Below, one piece after another: positions 36,973 to 64,000 of a stretch of 64,000 bases of DNA. Each line of letters starts with the position of its first letter. Within the stretch, counting starts at the first letter, position 1. The notes beneath the pieces are model-generated. The model worked only from the letters and a program-made list of their open reading frames with translations, did not search any database and was not told where the DNA came from. A program made the position numbers and the translations under genes. The DNA comes from Macrostomum hystrix (taxonomy: Eukaryota > Animalia > Platyhelminthes). The stretch covers positions 5,084,001-5,148,000 of the forward strand of contig CATNEN010000024.1 in NCBI GenBank assembly GCA_950097015.1. The letters are read 5' to 3'.

Positions 36973-37414
36973 ATCGAAAAAATGTTCGCACAAATCCATT
37001 TATCCTATTACTTTAGTTGTCGCTAGTCTAGATAGATAATGCTGAAATTGCAAACAAGCACATACCTCTGTGTGAGATACAAGATTAACTTGGACACGTA
37101 GGAATCCTTTGGACACTGGAATCTTTCATCTCAGCATCCACATGCGGTTGCATTCAAAGAGAACTGCGCTTCAATTGTTTGTTTCATAAAAAAAATAAAT
37201 AATAAACAACTGAAAGCTTTTTATATTAATCGATTAGCATTTAGTTGATTGATTGTTTATTCATCGTCTTGCAAATAATTTCTTATCAAATTTTTCGATA
37301 ATAAAACCCAAAGCTTTTCTTACATTGTATTTCATCACAAATCCTAATTCTCAACTATTTTAAAAGAATTGCTGCTTAAACTTTAATATAAAATTAACCC
37401 AATCTTACCTACTT

Positions 37415-40400
37415 CATGATTCCAAATTCAGAATCTCCATCATTTCCGAATTCAGAAGCTTCATCATTACCGAATCCAGAATCTCCATCATTTCCGAATT
37501 CAGAAGCTTCATCATTTCCGAATTCAGAAGCTTCATCATTTCCGAATTCAGAAGCTTCATCATTACCGAATTCAGAATCTCCATCATTTCCGAATTCAGA
37601 AGCTTCATCATTTCCGAATTCAGAAGCTCCATCATTACTGTATTCCGAAGCTTCATCATTTCCGAATCCAGAAGCTTCATCATTACCGAATTCAGAATCT
37701 CCATCATTTCCGAATTCAGAAGCTTCATCATTTCCAAATCCAGAAGCTTCATCATTTCCAAATCCAGAAGCTTCATCATTACCGAATTCAGAATCTCCAT
37801 CATTTCCGAATTCAGAAGCTTCATCATTACCGAATTCAGAATCTCCATCATTTCCGAATTCAGAAGCTTCATCATTTCCAAATCCAGAAGCTTCATCATT
37901 TCCAAATCCAGAAGCTTCATCATTACCGAATTCAGAAGCTTCATCATTACCGAATCCAGAAGCTTCATCATTTCCAAATCCAGAAGCTTCATCATTTCCG
38001 AATTCAGAAGCTTCATCATTACCGAATTCAGAAGCTTCATCATTACCGAATTCAGAATCTCCATCATTTCCGAATTCAGAAGCTTCATCATTTCCAAATC
38101 CAGAAGCTTCATCATTACCGAATTCAGAATCTCCATCATTTCCGAATTCAGAATCTCCATCATTTCCGAATTCAGAAGCTTCATCATTACCGAATCCAGA
38201 AGCTTCATCATTTCCGAATTCAGAAGCTTCATCATTTCCGAATCCAGAAGCTTCATCACTACCGAATCCAGAAGCTTCATCATTTCCGAATCCAGAAGCT
38301 TCATCATTTCCGAATCCAGAAGCTTCATCATTTCCGAATCCAGAAGCTTCATCATTTCCGAATCCAGAAGCTTCATCATTACCGAATTCAGAAGCTTCAT
38401 CATTTCCGAATTCTGAAGCTTCATCATTTCCGAATCCAGAAGCTTCATCACTACCGAATTCAGAAGCTTCATCATTTCCGAATTCAGAAGCTTCATCATT
38501 TCCGAATCCAGAAGCTTCATCACTACCGAATTCAGAAGCTTCATCATTTCCGAATCCAGAAGCTTCATCATTTCCGAATTCAGAAGCTTCATCATTTCCG
38601 AATCCGGAAGCTTCATCATTACCGAATTCAGAATCTCCATCATTTCCGAATTCAGAATCTCCATCATTTCCGAATTCAGAAGCTTCATCATTACCGAATC
38701 CAGAAGCTTCATCATTTCCGAATTCAGAAGCTTCATCATTTCCGAATTCATAAGCTTCATCATTTCTGAATCCAGAAGCTTCATCATTTCCGAATTCAGA
38801 AGCTTCATCATTTCCGAATCCAGAAGCTTCATCATTTCCGAATCCGGAAGCTTCATCATTACCGAATTCAGAATCTCCATCATTTCCGAATTCAGAATCT
38901 CCATCATTTCCGAATTGAGAAGCTTCATCATTACCGAATCCAGAAGCTTCATCATTACCGAATTCAGAAGCTTCATCACTACCGAATTCAGAAGCTTCAT
39001 CACTACCGAATTCAGAAGCTTCATCATTTCCGAATTCAGAAGCTTCATCACTACCGAATTCAGAAGCTTCATCATTTCCGAATCCAGAAGCTTCATCACT
39101 ACCGAATTCAGAAGCTTCATCACTACCGAATTCAGAAGCTTCATCACTACCGAATCCAGAAGCTTCATCATTTCCGAATCCAGAAGCTTCATCATTTCCG
39201 AATCCAGAAGCTTCATCATTTCCGAATCCAGAAGCTTCATCATTTCCAAATCCAGAAGCTTCATCATTTCCGAATCCAGAAGCTTCATCATTTCCGAATC
39301 CAGAAGCTTCATCATTTCCGAATCCAGAAGCTTCATCATTTCCAAATCCAGAAGCTTCATCATTTCCGAATCCAGAAGCTTCATCACTACCGAATTCAGA
39401 AGCTTCATCACTACCGAATTCAGAAGCTTCATCATTACCGAATTCAGAAGCTTCATCATTTCCGAATTCAGAAGCTTCATCATTTCCGAATTCAGAAGCT
39501 TCATCATTTCCGAATTCAGAAGCTTCATCATTTCCGAATTCAGAAGCTTCATCATTTCCGAATTCAGAAGCTTCATCATTACCGAATTCAGAATCTCCAT
39601 CATTTCCGAATTCAGAATCTCCATCATTTCCGAATTCAGAAGCTTCATCATTACCGAATCCAGAAGCTTCATCATTACCGAATTCAGAAGCTTCATCATT
39701 ACCGAATTCAGAAGCTTCATCACTACCGAATTCAGAAGCTTCATCATTTCCGAATTCAGAAGCTTCATCACTACCGAATTCAGAAGCTTCATCATTTCCG
39801 AATCCAGAAGCTTCATCACTACCGAATTCAGAAGCTTCATCACTACCGAATTCAGAAGCTTCATCACTACCGAATCCAGAAGCTTCATCATTTCCGAATC
39901 CAGAAGCTTCATCATTTCCGAATCCAGAAGCTTCATCATTTCTGAATCCAGAAGCTTCATCATTTCCAAATCCAGAAGCTTCATCATTTCCGAATCCAGA
40001 AGCTTCATCATTTCCGAATCCAGAAGCTTCATCATTTCCGAATCCAGAAGCTTCATCATTTCCAAATCCAGAAGCTTCATCATTTCCGAATCCAGAAGCT
40101 TCATCACTACCGAATTCAGAAGCTTCATCACTACCGAATTCAGAAGCTTCATCATTACCGAATTCAGAAGCTTCATCATTTCCGAATTCAGAAGCTTCAT
40201 CATTTCCGAATTCAGAAGCTTCATCATTTCCGAATTCAGAAGCTTCATCATTTCCGAATTCATAAGCTTCATCATTTCCGAATTCAGAAGCTTCATCACT
40301 ACCGAATTCAGAAGCTTCATCATTTCCGAATCCAGAAGCTTCATCACTACCGAATTCAGAAGCTTCATCACTACCGAATCCAGAAGCTTCATCATTTCCG

Positions 40401-41600
40401 AATCCAGAAGCTTCATCATTTCCGAATCCAGAAGCTTCATCATTTCCGAATCCAGAAGCTTCATCACTACCGAATTCAGAAGCTTCATCACTACCGAATT
40501 CAGAAGCTTCATCATTTCCGAATCCAGAAGCTTCATCATTTCCGAATCCAGAAGCTTCATCACTACCGAATTCAGAAGCTTCATCACTACCGAATTCAGA
40601 AGCTTCATCATTACCGAATTCAGAAGCTTCATCATTTCCGAATTCAGAAGCTTCATCATTTCCGAATTCAGAAGCTTCATCATTTCCGAATTCAGAAGCT
40701 TCATCATTTCCGAATTCATAAGCTTCATCATTTCCGAATTCAGAAGCTTCATCACTACCGAATTCAGAAGCTTCATCATTACCGAATCCAGAAGCTTCAT
40801 CATTTCCGAATCCAGAAGCTTCATCATTTCCGAATCCAGAAGCTTCATCATTTCCGAATCCAGAAGCTTCATCACTACCGAATTCAGAAGCTTCATCACT
40901 ACCGAATTCAGAAGCTTCATCATTTCCGAATTCAGAAGCTTCATCATTTCCGAATTCAGAAGCTTCATCATTTCCGAATTCATAAGCTTCATCATTTCTG
41001 AATCCAGAAGCTTCATCATTTCCGAATTCAGAAGCTTCATCATTTCCGAATCCAGAAGCTTCATCATTTCCGAATCCAGAAGCTTCATCATTTCCGAATT
41101 CATAAGCTTCATCATTTCTGAATCCAGAAGCTTCATCATTTCCGAATTCAGAAGCTTCATCATTTCCGAATTCAGAAGCTTCATCATTTCTGAATCCAGA
41201 AGCTTCATCATTTCCGAATTCAGAAGCTTCATCATTTCCGAATCCAGAAGCTTCATCATTTCCGAATCCAGAAGCTTCATCATTTCCGAATTCATAAGCT
41301 TCATCATTTCCGAATCCAGAAGCTTCATCATTACCGAATCCAGAAGCTTCATCACTACCGAATCCAGAAGCTTCATCATTTCCGAATTCATAAGCTTCAT
41401 CATTTCTGAATCCAGAAGCTTCATCACTACCGAATTCATAAGCTTCATCATTTCTGAATCCAGAAGCTTCATCACTACCGAATTCAGAAGCTTCATCATT
41501 TCCGAATTCAGAAGCTTCATCATTTCCGAATTCAGAAGCTTCATCATTACCGAATTCAGAAGCTTCATCATTACTGAATTTCGAAGGTTCATGGTTACTG
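37415..41600. repeat. 24-bp satellite (gaagcttcatcatttccgaattca), ~174 units, 4.2 kb
   Basis: Largest array, between the convergent ANKS1-like and ATP6V1F genes; units carry AAGCTT and often GAATTC. Confidence 0.97.
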
Positions 41601-42074
41601 TATTCCGAAGCTTAACATTTTCGGTTAAACTATACTTGAAATAAAATCTGCAGTAGACAAAAATAGGCTCTTTAAATGTATGCGTAATTTTATTATGGCA
41701 CTAACTTTTAGTTTTTACGTGCCAAACGTTGATGATTTATTATCTTGTCAAATAGTTTTAACCTCTGTAATCATATAGCAATCATCTACAAAGAATTGCA
41801 TAATATTAAACACAGGTGCAGTCAAATTGTAGTGAACTAATTAATTAGACTGTCTATGGTACTAACTGTGGCATCTAACTAAAGAATCTCTAAGAAAAAA
41901 ATTGTTTAAGAGCAGCAAAAATACATACAGGACTGAACAGAAATTTGAACTGAAATATTAATTTATGATGGATAAATATTTATTATGCAATTTTAAAGAG
42001 CGGAATAAAATAAAACGCGAGGTTGAAAATGAAGCATTTGTGTCCAGTGCCACAGGTATTCCCTCAATGAGAGT

Positions 42075-59172: not shown

Positions 59173-61597
59173 TAAGTAACCACATAAGCCCTAGATTCTA
59201 CTACGAGCCTAACAACAAAACGCTATGTAAAAAAACTAGCAAAAAACTAAAAAATATATATATCAGCATATAGGCCGCCAAAGTGAAACGTGTACAAAGC
59301 ATTGCGAAACGCTTCGAAATAACTGTTATTAATCAGAATATTGTTGTTGAAGATGGCGTAACAAAGATAAAGAGGCATAAATAGCGACAGGAAGGGTGGT
59401 GTCATTGGGTGAATGATTAAACTTCTGAGTTAAATTAAAAAACAACAAGTTGGCTTTCTTCTCTTAGATTTTTACCCTTTTTGTAAGTGTTAAAAACATT
59501 AAGACTACAATACATTAACTCACAAACATCAGGAGTATAAATTGCTATGCAAAAAACTAACATATTTTGTATATATACTGTATATAATAAGTACTACAGA
59601 TACCAGATTTCTCAATTTTACTTCGTACACGTACATTAGATATCTACATCTATAGATGTACGTGTTTAATGTCTATAAATAGACGCATATAAATAAATAA
59701 ATATATCTCTTTCTTAAGCCTTCGGTCACAGGAAACAACAAACTGAGGAAATGTTTTACAGCCAGAAGAAAACAACAAATGAATCTAAACAACAAAACGA
59801 CAATCAGGACAATAGAAACTATCAAACTTTCACTAATTATCTGTTAATTCTCATTAACTGAATGAAAAAAAACTGATAAAATGTTTGAAGCACCGACCAA
59901 TACGCAAATAAGCTGCGAAAAAAGATAATTAGCAACAGTAACAAGGCGGCTACCAAGGCCCGGTACTTCTACTTGAAGAAGAAAAACAAAGAGAAAAAGT
60001 GCATTTGCTGCGTCGGAGTGCTGTTTTATTGGTAAGCTTAAGATCTAAGAGTAATTTTAGAAACTAACAATAATTTAAAACGTTATTGACGAGAGCAATG
60101 ACCAATTAGACATTTAGCTTGTGGTAGCTTCCTCACATTTGAATGAATCATTTAAAATGTACCTTTGTGATTTCTACTATGCCAACCTTACTACTTTTCA
60201 TTAGGCATGGTGGAACATTTGACTATTATGCGGAATACAAAATCTGACTGCAATTTCTCTACTTTAGAGGATGGCCAAAAAACTTCAAGGATTCTGTTAA
60301 ATTAGAGAAAACTAGCTTAACACAATTTAAGGCACAATGAGCCACTTAAATATATTAACAATAGATATAAATAAGGTGAACAAAAAACTGAAGTCTTAAA
60401 TTATCAAACAGCAACAGGCCATACGCAATTATTTTAATTATGCGGAGAAAAAAAGTTAAAAAAAATTACGTTAGGATTAAGTATGCACATGTGATAATAT
60501 AAGCAAATGAATGAGTACATAAGTAGCAAATATTTGGTAAGGCGAATTATAAGCAAATAAAAAATGATCATTTACTATACATTTATAGATATATAGAATA
60601 TACACAGACAGGCGTGCGGACAAACTACTCACAGTAGTATTATTTCATTTTATAGTGGTATGCAGGTTGTTACACATTTTATGCAGTAGTTGTGACAGCC
60701 GCCAAATCTACTCGTATATAAACAAGATTCGATTACAATGCAATCTAGTTTGCTTTGATGAAAAATGCCCGCTCGCGTTTTCTATTGAAAAGTAGGTAGA
60801 AATAATTGGTGGATTATTGGAACACAGAATTTGCTAATACAATCATATTTTATTAGTTCGCTTAAATAAATTGGCACTTTCTTACACTATTTCTACTATA
60901 ACTTGCTCATTAATTTACAAATACAAAAGAATAAAATTTTCTAATACAGATGTTAAGTTAGCCGCGGAAAATTATTTACATATTTTATTTTTTTACACGC
61001 AAATAACATTACGCAAAATTTGAACACAGAACAATTGGAATCTATTTACTAGACATTGCTAACTAAGAAATCTATTAAACTATCAGTTTTCATGCAAATA
61101 CAAGGATCAACAGTATGACAGACAGGATGAAAAGCTCACAATTTTTGGAACAAAAAAAACTATTTAGGCTATATTGTAAAATAACAATTTCCATCTATTC
61201 TAACAGTCACTTGTCATAAGCTTAAGGAAAAAGAAATTATTAAGAGCAATTTATTCCTACAAACAGAGCAAATATATTGTATTTCTAGGATAACATAATT
61301 GTGCAGTTCTATAATCTGAATTCAAAATTCGGATTCCAAGTTTTTTACTTCGAAATTTCGGAATTAACTATGAAGCAAATTTAAGTTTGTCGATCGTGCT
61401 AGACAATATTAGAAAAAAATTCTCTGTGCAAAAAATTGAAAACGAAATACACAACATACCAATAAAACTAACTTACGGAGGGCGACAAATGGCCAAGCAA
61501 AAGCATAAAAAACTAATAAATCAAACCAAACGGCCAACTACCAAGCGCTGCCTTTTGTTGTGCTGATAATGTTGATTAATTGTAAACCGCCTCATTC

Positions 61598-63799
61598 TCA
61601 GTCAGGTTGGGGAGCTGGCGGCAGAGCCGACATGCGGAAGGCGAACACGCCGATTCTAAGGCCGACATCGCCGACATTAGACGGCGCTGCTCGAAGAATT
61701 TCTTCTACGTCGCAGCTAATTGATCGCGAAGGGAAAGAGACGCGCAGACAATTCTCGCCAACTTTGGGACTATTCAACGCCGTCAGGAAGGGCGCGCCGC
61801 AGGCTGTCAGGGGTCGTTGAACTACGCCGTTGAGCTGAACGGAATCGGCATGACAGGGCCCATCGGATAGCCAGCAGTACATCGAGATGGGATCTGGGCA
61901 CGGCTGCCGGCGCAGCAACGCCGAGCAGGGTCGCTGCCGGCAGTGCAATAGGGCGACAGCGTGGCCTGTCCTGGCCGCTTCGTCTTCGGGGAGGCGGAAC
62001 CGGACCTGGCAGACCAGGCCTGGCTGGGGTCGCAGATAGCGCGGCGCAAATAGCAGAGCAGCAGGTTGGAAGCCCAGCCTAGCCAGGTGATCGGCCAGGT
62101 GGTCGTGCATAATACGGCACAGATTGCCAACATAGAGCTGAAGCACTGCGGCGCTCTGCGGACAGGCTCGCCTGGCATAGCGGAGCGGAGTTTGGCCTTC
62201 GCAAGTTTCAACTCCAAAGTCGACGCCGCCAAGGCTGCACAATGCGTCGACTAGCTGCGGTCGGCGCTGTTTAATAGCTCTCTGGAGGGCTGAATTGCCA
62301 GCCGGACATAGCAGGTTGGGATCGGCTCCGGCTTGTAAGAGGCGATGAACCAGAGCTGGAGAGTCACGCTCCACGGCCAGCATTAGCAGGGTAAGGCCGG
62401 TGTCAGACGAGCGACAGTCGATGTCTAAAGTTTCAGGCGACTCTGTTCTAACTGATACCGCAGCTGCTGCATCCAGCAAGAGATCAACTATGCAAGAGTG
62501 ACCGCGAGCTACAGCTAGGCACAAGAGGCGTTGCAAATCGGACATTGTCAGCTGGGGCTCGTGCTGACTAACAGTGCGGCTAACTGCTGGCCAATCGCCG
62601 CGTTCCACAGCCCGACAAAGTAGCGGCCAGGACAGCGGAGGCGGCCGATTTGGCGGCAGTCGAGCCGACTGGCCGGCAACGTGGGCGCGAAGCAGTTCTG
62701 CCTGGTTGGCTACGTAGCGACAGTCGGCATCGTCGGGCGGCAACGCCACGGTGGCAAGAACAGCGGCTGAGGGAGTCGGAGCTGAAGACGCAGCGGAAGC
62801 GGTTGCTGATGCCGCCTTCTCTGACCGATCCTCAGAGGTGTCTGTTGCGACGACGACGGTGGAGGCGGCGGCGACCGAGGAAGAGGTCGGCTCTCGCTTT
62901 GCGGAGCCAAGCAGATCTGCCAGCAGTGGCGACTGATGCCGCGGCTTTGCTGAAGACGATGCCGAAGACGGTGGCACGGGCTCTGGATTGGCAGGATCAA
63001 CGTTTGCAGAGGCGTTGACGGACTCGACACCGTCAGTAAGAGCCGACGATTGGACGGCTTTGGCATCAATAACTGTCGCATTAGCAACCGCTGAGCTACC
63101 AGGCGCAACAGCTGTGGAGACTGCGTTCGACTTGCCTTCAATTTCTAGCGTGCTGGAAGAGCCGACAGAATTAGCGAAACTGCTGCCACCTTCTGAATTA
63201 TTCGAATTGCCATCCTCGCCCGTGGTGTCACCCGCCGAGGCGTCTTCGCTCTCTCGGCCAGCGCCTACACCGCTGCTGCCTCCGTTGAGTCGTCGCCGGC
63301 TCTTTGGCCGATCATCGTCCAGTCCATCAAGCAGCTTGTTAGTTTTAGCTGCCGCGCCAGCTTTTGAACTTGGCGCCTGGCTTTGATCCCATTTTTTAGG
63401 CGCTGGTCTTTTTCTACTGCCGCTACTGTTGCCGCTGCTGCCACTGATGTTACCAGTAGATGCTCGATTGCCACTGCCTCCAAGTTTGTTGGCTCTAGCC
63501 GATCGAAAGGCTTCGATCATGTCAGCAACTACCGCTAAGTTGTGCTCAGGTTCCCAGGTGTCATTTGATGGCGGATAATTTTTCCAGCGCACTTTGAAAT
63601 ACGACATTCCATTCTCAGTTTTTTCAGCTAGTATTTTGCCAACTACGTACAGAGCATCAGCATCTCCATTAGGTGGCGAAGGTGTACTTTTTGAGCTAAT
63701 TCCGGTGCCTCCACCGCCAGCTTTAACCACAGACGCTGCAACGGCCACTGCGGAAGCTGCGGTACCACAACTTGTCCGCCTACTGGCTGCAGTTTCCAT
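61598..63799 (-). CDS. MPHOSPH8: MPP8-like chromodomain + ankyrin repeat + C-terminal beta-sandwich protein, 733 aa, intronless
   Basis: Chromodomain YVVGKILAEKTENGMSYFKVRWKNYPPSNDTWEPEHNL; ~300-aa low-complexity linker; ankyrin repeats (GLTLLMLAVERD..GADPN..SALQRA..TPLRYA); C-terminal GPCHADSVQLNGVVQRP..SPKVGENCLRV..LRIGVFAFRM resembles the recalled MPP8 C-terminal domain. Confidence 0.82.
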   Translation of the reverse strand: METAASRRTSCGTAASAVAVAASVVKAGGGGTGISSKSTPSPPNGDADALYVVGKILAEKTENGMSYFKVRWKNYPPSNDTWEPEHNLAVVADMIEAFRSARANKLGGSGNRASTGNISGSSGNSSGSRKRPAPKKWDQSQAPSSKAGAAAKTNKLLDGLDDDRPKSRRRLNGGSSGVGAGRESEDASAGDTTGEDGNSNNSEGGSSFANSVGSSSTLEIEGKSNAVSTAVAPGSSAVANATVIDAKAVQSSALTDGVESVNASANVDPANPEPVPPSSASSSAKPRHQSPLLADLLGSAKREPTSSSVAAASTVVVATDTSEDRSEKAASATASAASSAPTPSAAVLATVALPPDDADCRYVANQAELLRAHVAGQSARLPPNRPPPLSWPLLCRAVERGDWPAVSRTVSQHEPQLTMSDLQRLLCLAVARGHSCIVDLLLDAAAAVSVRTESPETLDIDCRSSDTGLTLLMLAVERDSPALVHRLLQAGADPNLLCPAGNSALQRAIKQRRPQLVDALCSLGGVDFGVETCEGQTPLRYARRACPQSAAVLQLYVGNLCRIMHDHLADHLARLGFQPAALLFAPRYLRPQPGLVCQVRFRLPEDEAARTGHAVALLHCRQRPCSALLRRQPCPDPISMYCWLSDGPCHADSVQLNGVVQRPLTACGAPFLTALNSPKVGENCLRVSFPSRSISCDVEEILRAAPSNVGDVGLRIGVFAFRMSALPPAPQPD

Positions 63800-64000
63800 G
63801 ATTATTCTAAAACAATTAAAAGCACAGAATTATGCGTGATATTATCCACGGTCCATACACATCTGAACAATCGGCTGTTGTCTAGTTCAGCTGCACCAAC
63901 AGTTTGAGCTGGGCAATGCTGCGAAAACCGATTTAATAATATTTAGTACAATGGCTTTTACTCAGATCTTGGAGTGCAGATGCACAACATCCAATGCTCT

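What the first reader, a model, noticed from the sequence alone, without database searches (positions are those of the whole stretch)
61598..63799. Full-architecture MPP8 (HUSH subunit) candidate in an apparent flatworm
Seen: an N-terminal chromodomain with an intact aromatic cage (Y..W..Y in YVVGKIL..KTENG..VRWKNY..DTWEP), ankyrin repeats, and a C-terminal segment GPCHADSVQLNGVVQRP..SPKVGENCLRV..LRIGVFAFRM. Known: vertebrate MPP8 has this layout (FEVEKIL..KTEGG..VRWKGY..DTWEP; GPCSVQAVVLNDKFQLP..SPVAGPNKL..LLIGAYRV, recalled from memory). MPP8 reads H3K9me3 and binds TASOR through the C-terminal domain; HUSH is mainly characterised in vertebrates and is absent from fly and worm models. Inference: a HUSH-like or proto-HUSH silencing system may operate in this repeat-rich invertebrate genome.
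Basis: partly seen in the sequence, partly recalled or inferred. Interest (0 to 1): 0.8.

Follow-up and report, generated by a model that had tools for sequence, protein, structure and literature searches.

The report
Flatworm MPP8-like chromatin reader gene
An expressed, intron-free gene of the flatworm Macrostomum hystrix encodes a highly diverged relative of vertebrate MPP8, the histone-mark reader of the HUSH transposon-silencing complex, so HUSH-type silencing could now be tested in a tractable invertebrate genus.

Summary
Window 61598-63799 (-) is one uninterrupted 733-aa ORF with an N-terminal chromodomain, a long Ser/Ala-rich linker, ankyrin repeats and a C-terminal domain.

- **Fold:** an AlphaFold2 model of residues 380-733, built from Macrostomum sequences only, matches the crystal structure of the human MPP8 C-terminal region (8QFB). 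Foldseek gives E 3e-16. VIA gives Z 25.6 over 286 of 295 residues; the next hits are ankyrin-only, at Z 13.
- **Sequence:** similarity of the last domain to MPP8 is weak, and reciprocal best hits of single domains do not single out MPP8.
- **Function:** the gene is real and in use. dN/dS against its M. lignano orthologue is 0.13. Three transcriptome-type runs hold an unspliced transcript that carries the Macrostomum spliced leader.
- **Paralogue:** a copy with at least 3 introns lies on contig C38, so the window copy may be an old retrogene.
- **Partners:** the genome (M. hystrix, 220,453,370 bp) also has three DUF3715 (TASOR-type) loci, SETDB1-type loci and MORC loci. I found no Periphilin, and binding to a TASOR-like protein is not shown.

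Verdict: a new, unannotated member of the MPP8 family. A HUSH-like role is plausible but untested. The scan noted this same stretch once more in an overlapping reading (s1-348891), not on other DNA.

The parts
61598..63799 (-). Complete coding sequence of the MPP8-like protein (733 codons plus stop), with no intron
   Evidence: ORF list. No stops in the six-frame match. Transcript contigs cross it without any joint.
63491..63664 (-). Chromodomain (residues 46-103) with Y51/W72/Y75 at the aromatic-cage positions
   Evidence: Pfam Chromo E 1.6e-11. Gapless alignment to the human MPP8 chromodomain, 43.6 bits, best PDB hit. dN/dS 0.03 against M. lignano.
62735..63490 (-). Ser/Ala/Gly-rich linker (residues 104-355), probably disordered
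   Evidence: Composition, and the lowest conservation of any region (59% identity to the orthologue, 23% to the paralogue). Human MPP8 125-535 is likewise unstructured (PMC7618375).
62630..62734 (-). Pre-ankyrin segment (residues 356-390) with the motif ELLRAHV. It aligns to the eel segment that is probably the TASOR-SPOC-binding stretch.
   Evidence: Fish MPP8 HMM alignment of the M. lignano orthologue P0001 and the motif comparison. The role of human 536-562 and F548 is from PMC7618375. Equivalence of the residues is inferred.
62078..62629 (-). Five ankyrin repeats (residues 391-574); the tenth helix (547-574) is about twice the usual length
   Evidence: AF2 model: 10 helices, the last 28 residues long. 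Pfam Ank families. Aligned to 8QFB.
61625..62071 (-). C-terminal beta-sandwich (residues 577-725), PINIT-like as in MPP8
   Evidence: AF2 strands at model residues 198-346. 8QFB is aligned through residue 859. Language-model features nearest to PINIT clusters, 0.89. hhalign to fish MPP8 gives 80% probability over the GPC...LN..Q..L...GEN block.
63800..64000 (-). 5' UTR. It runs on to about window position 64038, just past the window end, where the spliced leader is joined. It holds two short upstream ORFs.
   Evidence: Contigs of runs X4-X6 end at L001 position 3939 with 24 loose letters whose reverse complement is nt 11-34 of the Macrostomum spliced leader. Sequence read.
61166..61597 (-). 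3' UTR, at least 290-430 nt, with AATAAA at 61250-61255
   Evidence: Transcript contigs reach window positions 61304, 61286 and 61166. Sequence read.

Best explanation
The gene encodes a strongly diverged member of the MPP8 family. Its layout is that of MPP8: chromodomain, disordered linker, short pre-ankyrin segment, five ankyrin repeats with an extended last helix, and a PINIT-like beta-sandwich packed against that helix. Shown here: the architecture, the fold match to human MPP8, purifying selection, and transcription as a spliced-leader trans-spliced mRNA whose coding part is not spliced. Inferred: the chromodomain reads methylated H3K9 or H3K9-like peptides through its Y/W/Y cage; the ankyrin plus sandwich module docks onto a TASOR-like scaffold (three DUF3715 loci exist in this genome); and this brings SETDB1-type methyltransferase and MORC-type compaction to transcribed repeats, as HUSH does in vertebrates. 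The window copy is probably the derived one of two paralogues, made by retroposition before M. hystrix and M. lignano split. It has no coding intron in either species, while the C38 paralogue has at least three and keeps more MPP8-like sequence. My odds: MPP8-family homologue 0.85; acts in a HUSH-like complex with a TASOR-like protein 0.5; retrogene origin 0.6.
For: - Architecture: Pfam Chromo plus Ank.
- Chromodomain: best PDB hit is MPP8.
- Model: AF2 from 5 Macrostomum rows only, pLDDT 78, pTM 0.76.
- Fold match: Foldseek ranks 8QFB chains 1-4, E 3.3e-16, TM 0.79 by target; the next hit is 2e-6 and ankyrin only. VIA gives Z 25.6, 286/295 residues, rmsd 3.7, against 13.2 for the next. Nearest Atlas model is 'putative M-phase phosphoprotein 8'.
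- The description of 8QFB (five ankyrin repeats, helix alpha10 twice as long, PINIT-like sandwich) fits the model.
- Weak but co-linear sequence signals: eel MPP8 BLASTP chromo 3e-13 and ANK 8e-8; fish HMM on the pre-ANK segment and ANK of the window protein, and on the sandwich motif of paralogue P0132 at the same profile positions; hhalign 80%, E 1.4e-5; PINIT-like features.
- Function: dN/dS 0.13 overall, 0.03 in the chromodomain; orthologue intact and intronless in M. lignano; SL-bearing unspliced transcript contigs with 0 mismatches in three runs.
- Partners in the genome: DUF3715 over cut-off at two loci plus a weaker third, with human TASOR 6TL1 as the only significant PDB hit; SETDB1-type Tudor_4 next to Pre-SET; Morc6_S5 at three loci.
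- Paralogue with at least 3 introns.
Against: - Sequence similarity of the sandwich to MPP8 is too low for HMMER at library scale: only two M. lignano proteins were found among 1.84 billion.
- Reverse searches from eel MPP8 hit HP1 first for the chromodomain and generic ankyrin genes for the C-terminal part.
- The human residues whose combined mutation (F548G/R741A/F813A) abolishes HUSH repression are not kept in the window protein, on my reading of the alignments: F813 aligns to V, R741 probably to P, F548 probably to L.
- No Periphilin-type domain was found.
- SPOC and DomI could not be shown in the TASOR-like gene.
- No poly(A) remnant or target-site duplication marks the gene as a retrocopy.
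- The fold rests on a prediction from a very shallow alignment.
Confidence: 0.7

Rival explanations
1. It is a true MPP8-family homologue but does not work in a HUSH-like complex. It could act as a general heterochromatin reader or adaptor, for example bridging H3K9 methyltransferases through H3K9-like peptides, or it could have taken a lineage-specific role after duplication.
For: Key TASOR-contact residues of human MPP8 are not kept. No Periphilin was found. The window copy is the more diverged paralogue. The human chromodomain also binds SETDB1, ATF7IP, G9a and GLP peptides.
Against: The whole TASOR-binding module (pre-ANK segment, ankyrin repeats, sandwich) is under purifying selection. 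TASOR-type DUF3715 genes are present. Interfaces can co-evolve with their partners.
Confidence: 0.22
2. The resemblance is convergent: an independent fusion of a chromodomain, ankyrin repeats and a PINIT-type sandwich that is not descended from the MPP8 gene.
For: No significant library-scale sequence hit links the sandwich to MPP8. Reverse best hits of single domains are other families. Chromo and ankyrin domains are both promiscuous.
Against: Domain order, number of repeats, the unusual long tenth helix and the relative placement of the sandwich all superpose on 8QFB over 286 residues. No other PDB or Atlas protein shares the combination. Weak sequence signals fall at co-linear positions in four separate segments.
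Confidence: 0.05
3. It is a dead or dying retrocopy: a chance-open reading frame with no function.
For: Intronless coding region, with an intron-bearing paralogue elsewhere.
Against: The ORF is intact in two species with dS above 1 and dN/dS 0.13. Transcript contigs carry the spliced leader.
Confidence: 0.02

Closest known systems
Human and vertebrate MPP8 (MPHOSPH8), the HUSH subunit; structures 8QFB (C-terminal region) and 3QO2/3LWE/9H77 (chromodomain)
   Same: Same domain order. Chromodomain about 45% identical, aligned without gaps, with aromatic residues at the three cage positions. Disordered linker. Five ankyrin repeats with a long last helix, and a PINIT-like sandwich that superposes at Z 25.6.
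   Different: Residues at the human TASOR contacts differ. The protein is shorter (733 against 860 aa). The gene has no coding intron and its mRNA is trans-spliced. Two paralogues are present in the genus.
Macrostomum lignano PAA74812.1 / A0A267FPB5 (BOX15_Mlig014748g4), annotated 'hypothetical protein' and 'Chromo domain-containing protein'
   Same: Orthologue: 65% identity over the full length, 88% in the chromodomain and 85% in the ankyrin repeats. It is also a single-exon gene.
   Different: 21 residues longer, with a divergent linker and sandwich loops. Present in several near-identical copies in the duplicated M. lignano genome. Not named MPP8 in any source.
Paralogue on M. hystrix contig C38:33965334-33973453 (-) and its M. 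lignano counterpart A0A1I8GI69 (P0132)
   Same: Same architecture; 55% identity in the chromodomain, 52% in the ankyrin repeats and 44% in the sandwich.
   Different: At least four coding exons. It keeps more MPP8-like sequence: the fish MPP8 HMM hits its sandwich motif at 11.7 bits, and its pre-ANK motif ELFRAHL keeps the Phe. It is probably the parental copy.
PINIT domains of Siz/PIAS SUMO E3 ligases
   Same: The last domain has PINIT-like language-model features. The MPP8 sandwich is described as PINIT-like.
   Different: No SP-RING/zf-MIZ or SAP domain, so it is not an E3 ligase. The ankyrin context is MPP8-specific.
HP1/CBX chromodomain proteins
   Same: Very similar chromodomain: 39 bits to Drosophila HP1. 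The worm's own HP1 is the best hit of an eel MPP8 chromodomain.
   Different: No chromoshadow domain. Ankyrin repeats and a sandwich take its place.

Membership tests
MPP8 (MPHOSPH8) family | N-terminal chromodomain with an intact aromatic cage | tested here: met
   Pfam Chromo E 1.6e-11. Gapless alignment to human MPP8 with Y/W/Y opposite F/W/Y. The identity of the cage residues is from my own knowledge.
MPP8 (MPHOSPH8) family | Chromodomain closer to MPP8 than to other chromodomain families, in both directions | tested here: inconclusive
   Forward: MPP8 43.6 bits against HP1 39.4. Reverse: eel MPP8 chromodomain hits worm HP1 at 50.5 bits, this gene at 45.8 and the paralogue at 44.0.
MPP8 (MPHOSPH8) family | Five ankyrin repeats whose tenth helix is about twice as long and runs along the next domain | tested here: met
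   AF2 model has ten helices, the last 28 residues long. It superposes on 8QFB. Description of 8QFB.
MPP8 (MPHOSPH8) family | C-terminal PINIT-like beta-sandwich in the MPP8 arrangement | tested here: met
   Foldseek E 3.3e-16, TM 0.79 by target. VIA Z 25.6, 286/295 aligned through residue 859. Nearest Atlas model is MPP8. PINIT-like features. The model is a prediction from 5 sequences.
MPP8 (MPHOSPH8) family | Detectable sequence homology of the C-terminal domain | tested here: inconclusive
   Library-scale HMMER finds only Macrostomum proteins. Pairwise-scale signals only: hhalign 80%, E 1.4e-5; fish HMM 11.7 bits on the paralogue. No sandwich match from eel MPP8 against the genome.
MPP8 (MPHOSPH8) family | Pre-ankyrin segment that binds the TASOR SPOC domain (human 536-562, F548) | tested here: inconclusive
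   The orthologue's ELLRAHL segment aligns to the eel EDFQKHL segment, and the window protein carries ELLRAHV at the same place. Phe is Leu here and is kept in the paralogue. That the eel Phe equals human F548 is inferred from numbering (off by one).
MPP8 (MPHOSPH8) family | Binds TASOR SPOC-DomI through the C-terminal module | not testable with these tools
   No verdict could be obtained (see Tried and rejected). It needs full-length cDNA models and a bench test.
MPP8 (MPHOSPH8) family | Binds H3K9me3 and H3K9-like methyl-lysine peptides | not testable with these tools
   Only the cage residues can be read from the sequence.
HUSH-like complex (as a system in this genome) | TASOR-like scaffold: DUF3715 pseudo-PARP followed by SPOC and DomI | tested here: inconclusive
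   DUF3715 is over cut-off on C8 and C38, and weaker on C32. Human TASOR 6TL1 is the only significant PDB hit. The region after it could not be folded, pLDDT 43.
HUSH-like complex (as a system in this genome) | Periphilin-type RNA-binding subunit | tested here: inconclusive
   Pfam Lge1 gives no hit at E 0.1. Weaker hits are coiled-coil or minisatellite artefacts. Two unchecked first-stage notes claim one elsewhere; I could not locate them.
HUSH-like complex (as a system in this genome) | Effectors: SETDB1-type H3K9 methyltransferase and a MORC ATPase | tested here: met
   Tudor_4 lies next to Pre-SET on C8 and C39. Morc6_S5 is found at three loci. Orthology to MORC2 specifically was not tested.
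Siz/PIAS SUMO E3 ligases | PINIT domain together with an SP-RING (zf-MIZ) | tested here: not met
   No zf-MIZ or SAP in the Pfam scan. Only the sandwich resembles PINIT.
HP1/CBX | Chromodomain plus chromoshadow domain | tested here: not met
   No chromoshadow domain. The genome's real HP1 is on C25.

The most novel reading that the evidence does not exclude
Macrostomum carries a complete HUSH-like surveillance system with two specialised readers. One of them is itself a long, intronless retrogene, which is exactly the class of target that HUSH silences in mammals. It might escape self-silencing because spliced-leader trans-splicing gives its transcript a splicing mark. That would make trans-splicing a self/non-self signal for genome defence.
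Probability: 0.08. Interest if true: 0.85.

Novelty: new member of a known kind. Interest (0 to 1): 0.55.

Why it matters
HUSH is described as a vertebrate system, and MPP8 is stated to lack orthologues in fly and nematode (10.1101/2021.11.29.466909). Only TASOR-like proteins have been traced through invertebrates (PMC10578480).

It also places it in a genus in which M. lignano is a model amenable to transgenesis (abstract of PMC5173321, listed). Whether transcription-coupled, intron-sensitive silencing predates vertebrates could then be tested directly.

The case also shows that the family escapes sequence annotation: both M. lignano proteins are labelled only 'chromo domain-containing'. Other invertebrate members may be hidden in the same way.

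Tried and rejected
- **Complex prediction.** I paired residues 345-733 with the N-terminal 291 residues of the large ORF of the C8 TASOR-like gene. It returned no answer; the alignments were not used and the partner folded poorly. This is neither support nor evidence against binding.
- **AF2 of the TASOR-like region.** pLDDT was 43, so no fold search was made.
- **Whole-library HMMER search.** The Macrostomum C-terminal profile found only the two M. lignano proteins, so no bridge to other phyla.
- **Word-index searches.** They found only the M. lignano orthologue, ankyrin proteins and one eel MPP8. The eel-seeded search listed only fish, so the MPP8 profile I could build had little diversity.
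- **PDB sequence search with the last 180 residues.** Nothing at E 10.
- **Atlas feature search on ANK plus sandwich.** Swamped by ankyrin clusters.
- **Reverse searches from eel MPP8.** Ambiguous or swamped.
- **Periphilin through Pfam Lge1.** Artefacts only.
- **Retrocopy marks.** Read by eye downstream of the stop: no poly(A) tract and no flanking duplication.
- **Exact look-up of P0132.** Not on record.
- **Literature searches for MPP8 in flatworms or other invertebrates.** Nothing relevant.
- **Rejected readings.** Pseudogene (selection and expression speak against it), PIAS-type ligase (no RING) and HP1 (no chromoshadow domain).
Full report
**What is there.** Window 61598..63799 on the minus strand is one open reading frame of 733 codons. 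Pfam places a chromodomain at residues 51-99 (E 1.6e-11) and ankyrin families at about 459-545. Residues 104-355 are rich in Ser, Ala and Gly and are the least conserved part. The vertebrate strings it recalled from memory agree with tool output for human MPP8.

**Which organism.** The assembly has 220,453,370 bases in 42 contigs, a longest contig of 35,345,953 and a contig of 13,505,968. These are exactly the total, contig number, longest contig and N50 published for Macrostomum hystrix (PMC10468722). So the organism is that flatworm.

**Relatives by sequence.**
- The only close relative in 5.8 billion clustered proteins is a 754-aa M. lignano protein, 65% identical and labelled hypothetical or 'chromo domain-containing'.
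- The one named non-Macrostomum protein with both chromo and ankyrin domains is an eel MPP8. BLASTP against it aligns the chromodomain (3e-13) and the ankyrin region with the start of the following helix (8e-8), but not the last domain.
- A whole-library HMMER search with a profile of three Macrostomum C-terminal domains found only two M. lignano proteins. At that scale the last domain is an orphan.
- At pairwise scale the signals are weak but co-linear. A fish MPP8 HMM aligns the pre-ankyrin segment and the ankyrin repeats of the window protein, and it hits the sandwich motif of the paralogue's M. lignano counterpart (P0132) at the same profile positions.
- hhalign restricted to the last domain gives 80% probability, E 1.4e-5, over 45 columns.
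- Language-model features of residues 575-733 are nearest to PINIT-domain clusters, score 0.89, which is lead level only.

**The decisive test: fold.** A crystal structure of the human MPP8 C-terminal region exists (8QFB; found). It is described as five ankyrin repeats whose tenth helix is twice as long, followed by a PINIT-like beta-sandwich (PMC7618375).
- I folded residues 380-733 with an alignment of Macrostomum sequences only and no template. The result was pLDDT 78 and pTM 0.76: ten helices, the last 28 residues long, then a sandwich.
- Foldseek against the PDB ranks four chains of 8QFB first (E 3.3e-16, TM 0.79 by target). The next hit is at 2e-6 and covers the ankyrin part only.
- VIA-align gives Z 25.6, 286 of 295 residues, rmsd 3.7, spanning human residues 565-859. 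The best ankyrin-only hits reach 13.2.
- The nearest ESM Atlas model is a chordate 'putative M-phase phosphoprotein 8' cluster.

**Where membership is not clean.**
- The chromodomain's best PDB match is MPP8, but by only about 4 bits over HP1.
- In reverse, an eel MPP8 chromodomain hits the worm's canonical HP1 first (50.5 bits), the window gene second (45.8) and the paralogue fourth.
- The eel ankyrin plus C-terminal region finds only generic ankyrin genes, and nothing over the sandwich.
- A triple mutant of human MPP8 (F548G, R741A, F813A) loses HUSH repression. On my reading of the alignments F813 aligns to Val, R741 probably to Pro and F548 probably to Leu. The paralogue keeps the Phe of the pre-ankyrin motif.

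**It is a working gene.**
- Against the M. lignano orthologue, dN/dS is 0.13 overall, 0.03 in the chromodomain, 0.06 in the ankyrin region and 0.16 in the sandwich. dS is above 1, so the ratios are approximate.
- Three small runs of one study each hold a single contig of 2.76-2.9 kb. These contigs are identical to the genome and cross the whole coding region without a joint.
- Each ends about 240 nt upstream of the ATG in 24 letters that are not in the local genome. Their reverse complement equals nt 11-34 of the 35-nt Macrostomum spliced leader (PMC8629364). The same 24-mer occurs 32 times elsewhere in the genome, partly in tandem arrays.
- The mRNA is therefore trans-spliced in its 5' UTR and unspliced in its coding part. 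The acceptor lies just beyond the window end.

**Two paralogues.**
- Contig C38 (33965334-33973453, minus) carries a second gene of the same architecture, split into at least four coding exons. P0132 is its M. lignano counterpart.
- The window gene's orthologue in M. lignano is also a single exon of 2265 bp.
- The duplication therefore predates the split of the two species. The intronless copy is most simply a retrogene, although no poly(A) remnant or target duplication survives.
They were used exon by exon.

**HUSH context.**
- DUF3715, the TASOR/TEX15 pseudo-PARP domain, is over Pfam's cut-off on C8 and C38 and is weaker on C32.
- The C8 exon's only significant PDB hit is human TASOR 6TL1. 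It is followed by a 1123-codon ORF that has a paralogue beside the C32 locus.
- TASOR-like proteins are already reported throughout Metazoa, while TEX15 is said to be vertebrate-specific (PMC10578480).
- A SETDB1-type Tudor_4 lies next to Pre-SET on C8 and C39. Morc6_S5 occurs at three loci.
- A Periphilin-type Lge1 domain was not found, and the weak hits are artefacts. Two unchecked first-stage notes claim a Periphilin-like domain fused to an RRM elsewhere in this genome. I could not locate them, so they remain untested.

**Verdict.** This is a new, unannotated and very diverged member of the MPP8 family (odds about 0.85). It most likely serves as the methyl-H3K9 reader that docks on a TASOR-like scaffold (about 0.5). 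It is not categorically new, because the kind is known and invertebrate TASOR-like proteins are published. Its value is that it supplies the missing reader in a tractable flatworm genus, and that it shows why sequence annotation missed it.

Noticed in passing
window 1885-59160: At least 30 different minisatellite arrays, with units mostly 14-40 bp and each array 0.2-4.2 kb, fill most of the window upstream of the gene. The largest is a 24-bp unit with 175 copies at 37412-41620.
   Followed up: partly
window 63800-64000 (5' UTR, continuing to about 64038): Two short upstream ORFs (10 and 6 codons) lie between the spliced-leader acceptor and the main ATG.
   Followed up: no
G000:C38:33965334-33973453 (loci L002, L003, L004, L006, L008): Intron-bearing paralogue of the window gene with the same chromo-ankyrin-sandwich layout. 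A tandem repeat that translates as a PGSFGY-type array lies about 0.7 kb upstream of its first exon, on the opposite strand.
   Followed up: partly
L014:4637-9145 (G000:C8:4453637-4458145): TASOR-like gene: a DUF3715 exon followed by a 1123-codon ORF. The middle of that ORF is a long tandem repeat of PVPVS/TPAT-type units and its end is Arg/Ser-rich. Paralogue on C32 (L016).
   Followed up: partly
G000:C15, C17 and C42 (for example C17:2766-68389): The spliced-leader 24-mer recurs at a spacing of about 11.6 kb in tandem arrays. These are presumably SL RNA genes embedded in a larger repeat unit.
   Followed up: no
L007:1084-1836 (G000:C25, minus): Canonical HP1 gene (chromodomain plus chromoshadow domain) in a single 250-codon ORF. 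It is the best genomic match to a vertebrate MPP8 chromodomain.
   Followed up: partly
G000:C8:1066226-1068220 and C39:11669326-11671795: Two SETDB1-type loci (Tudor_4 next to Pre-SET on the same strand), which suggests this methyltransferase is duplicated as well.
   Followed up: no
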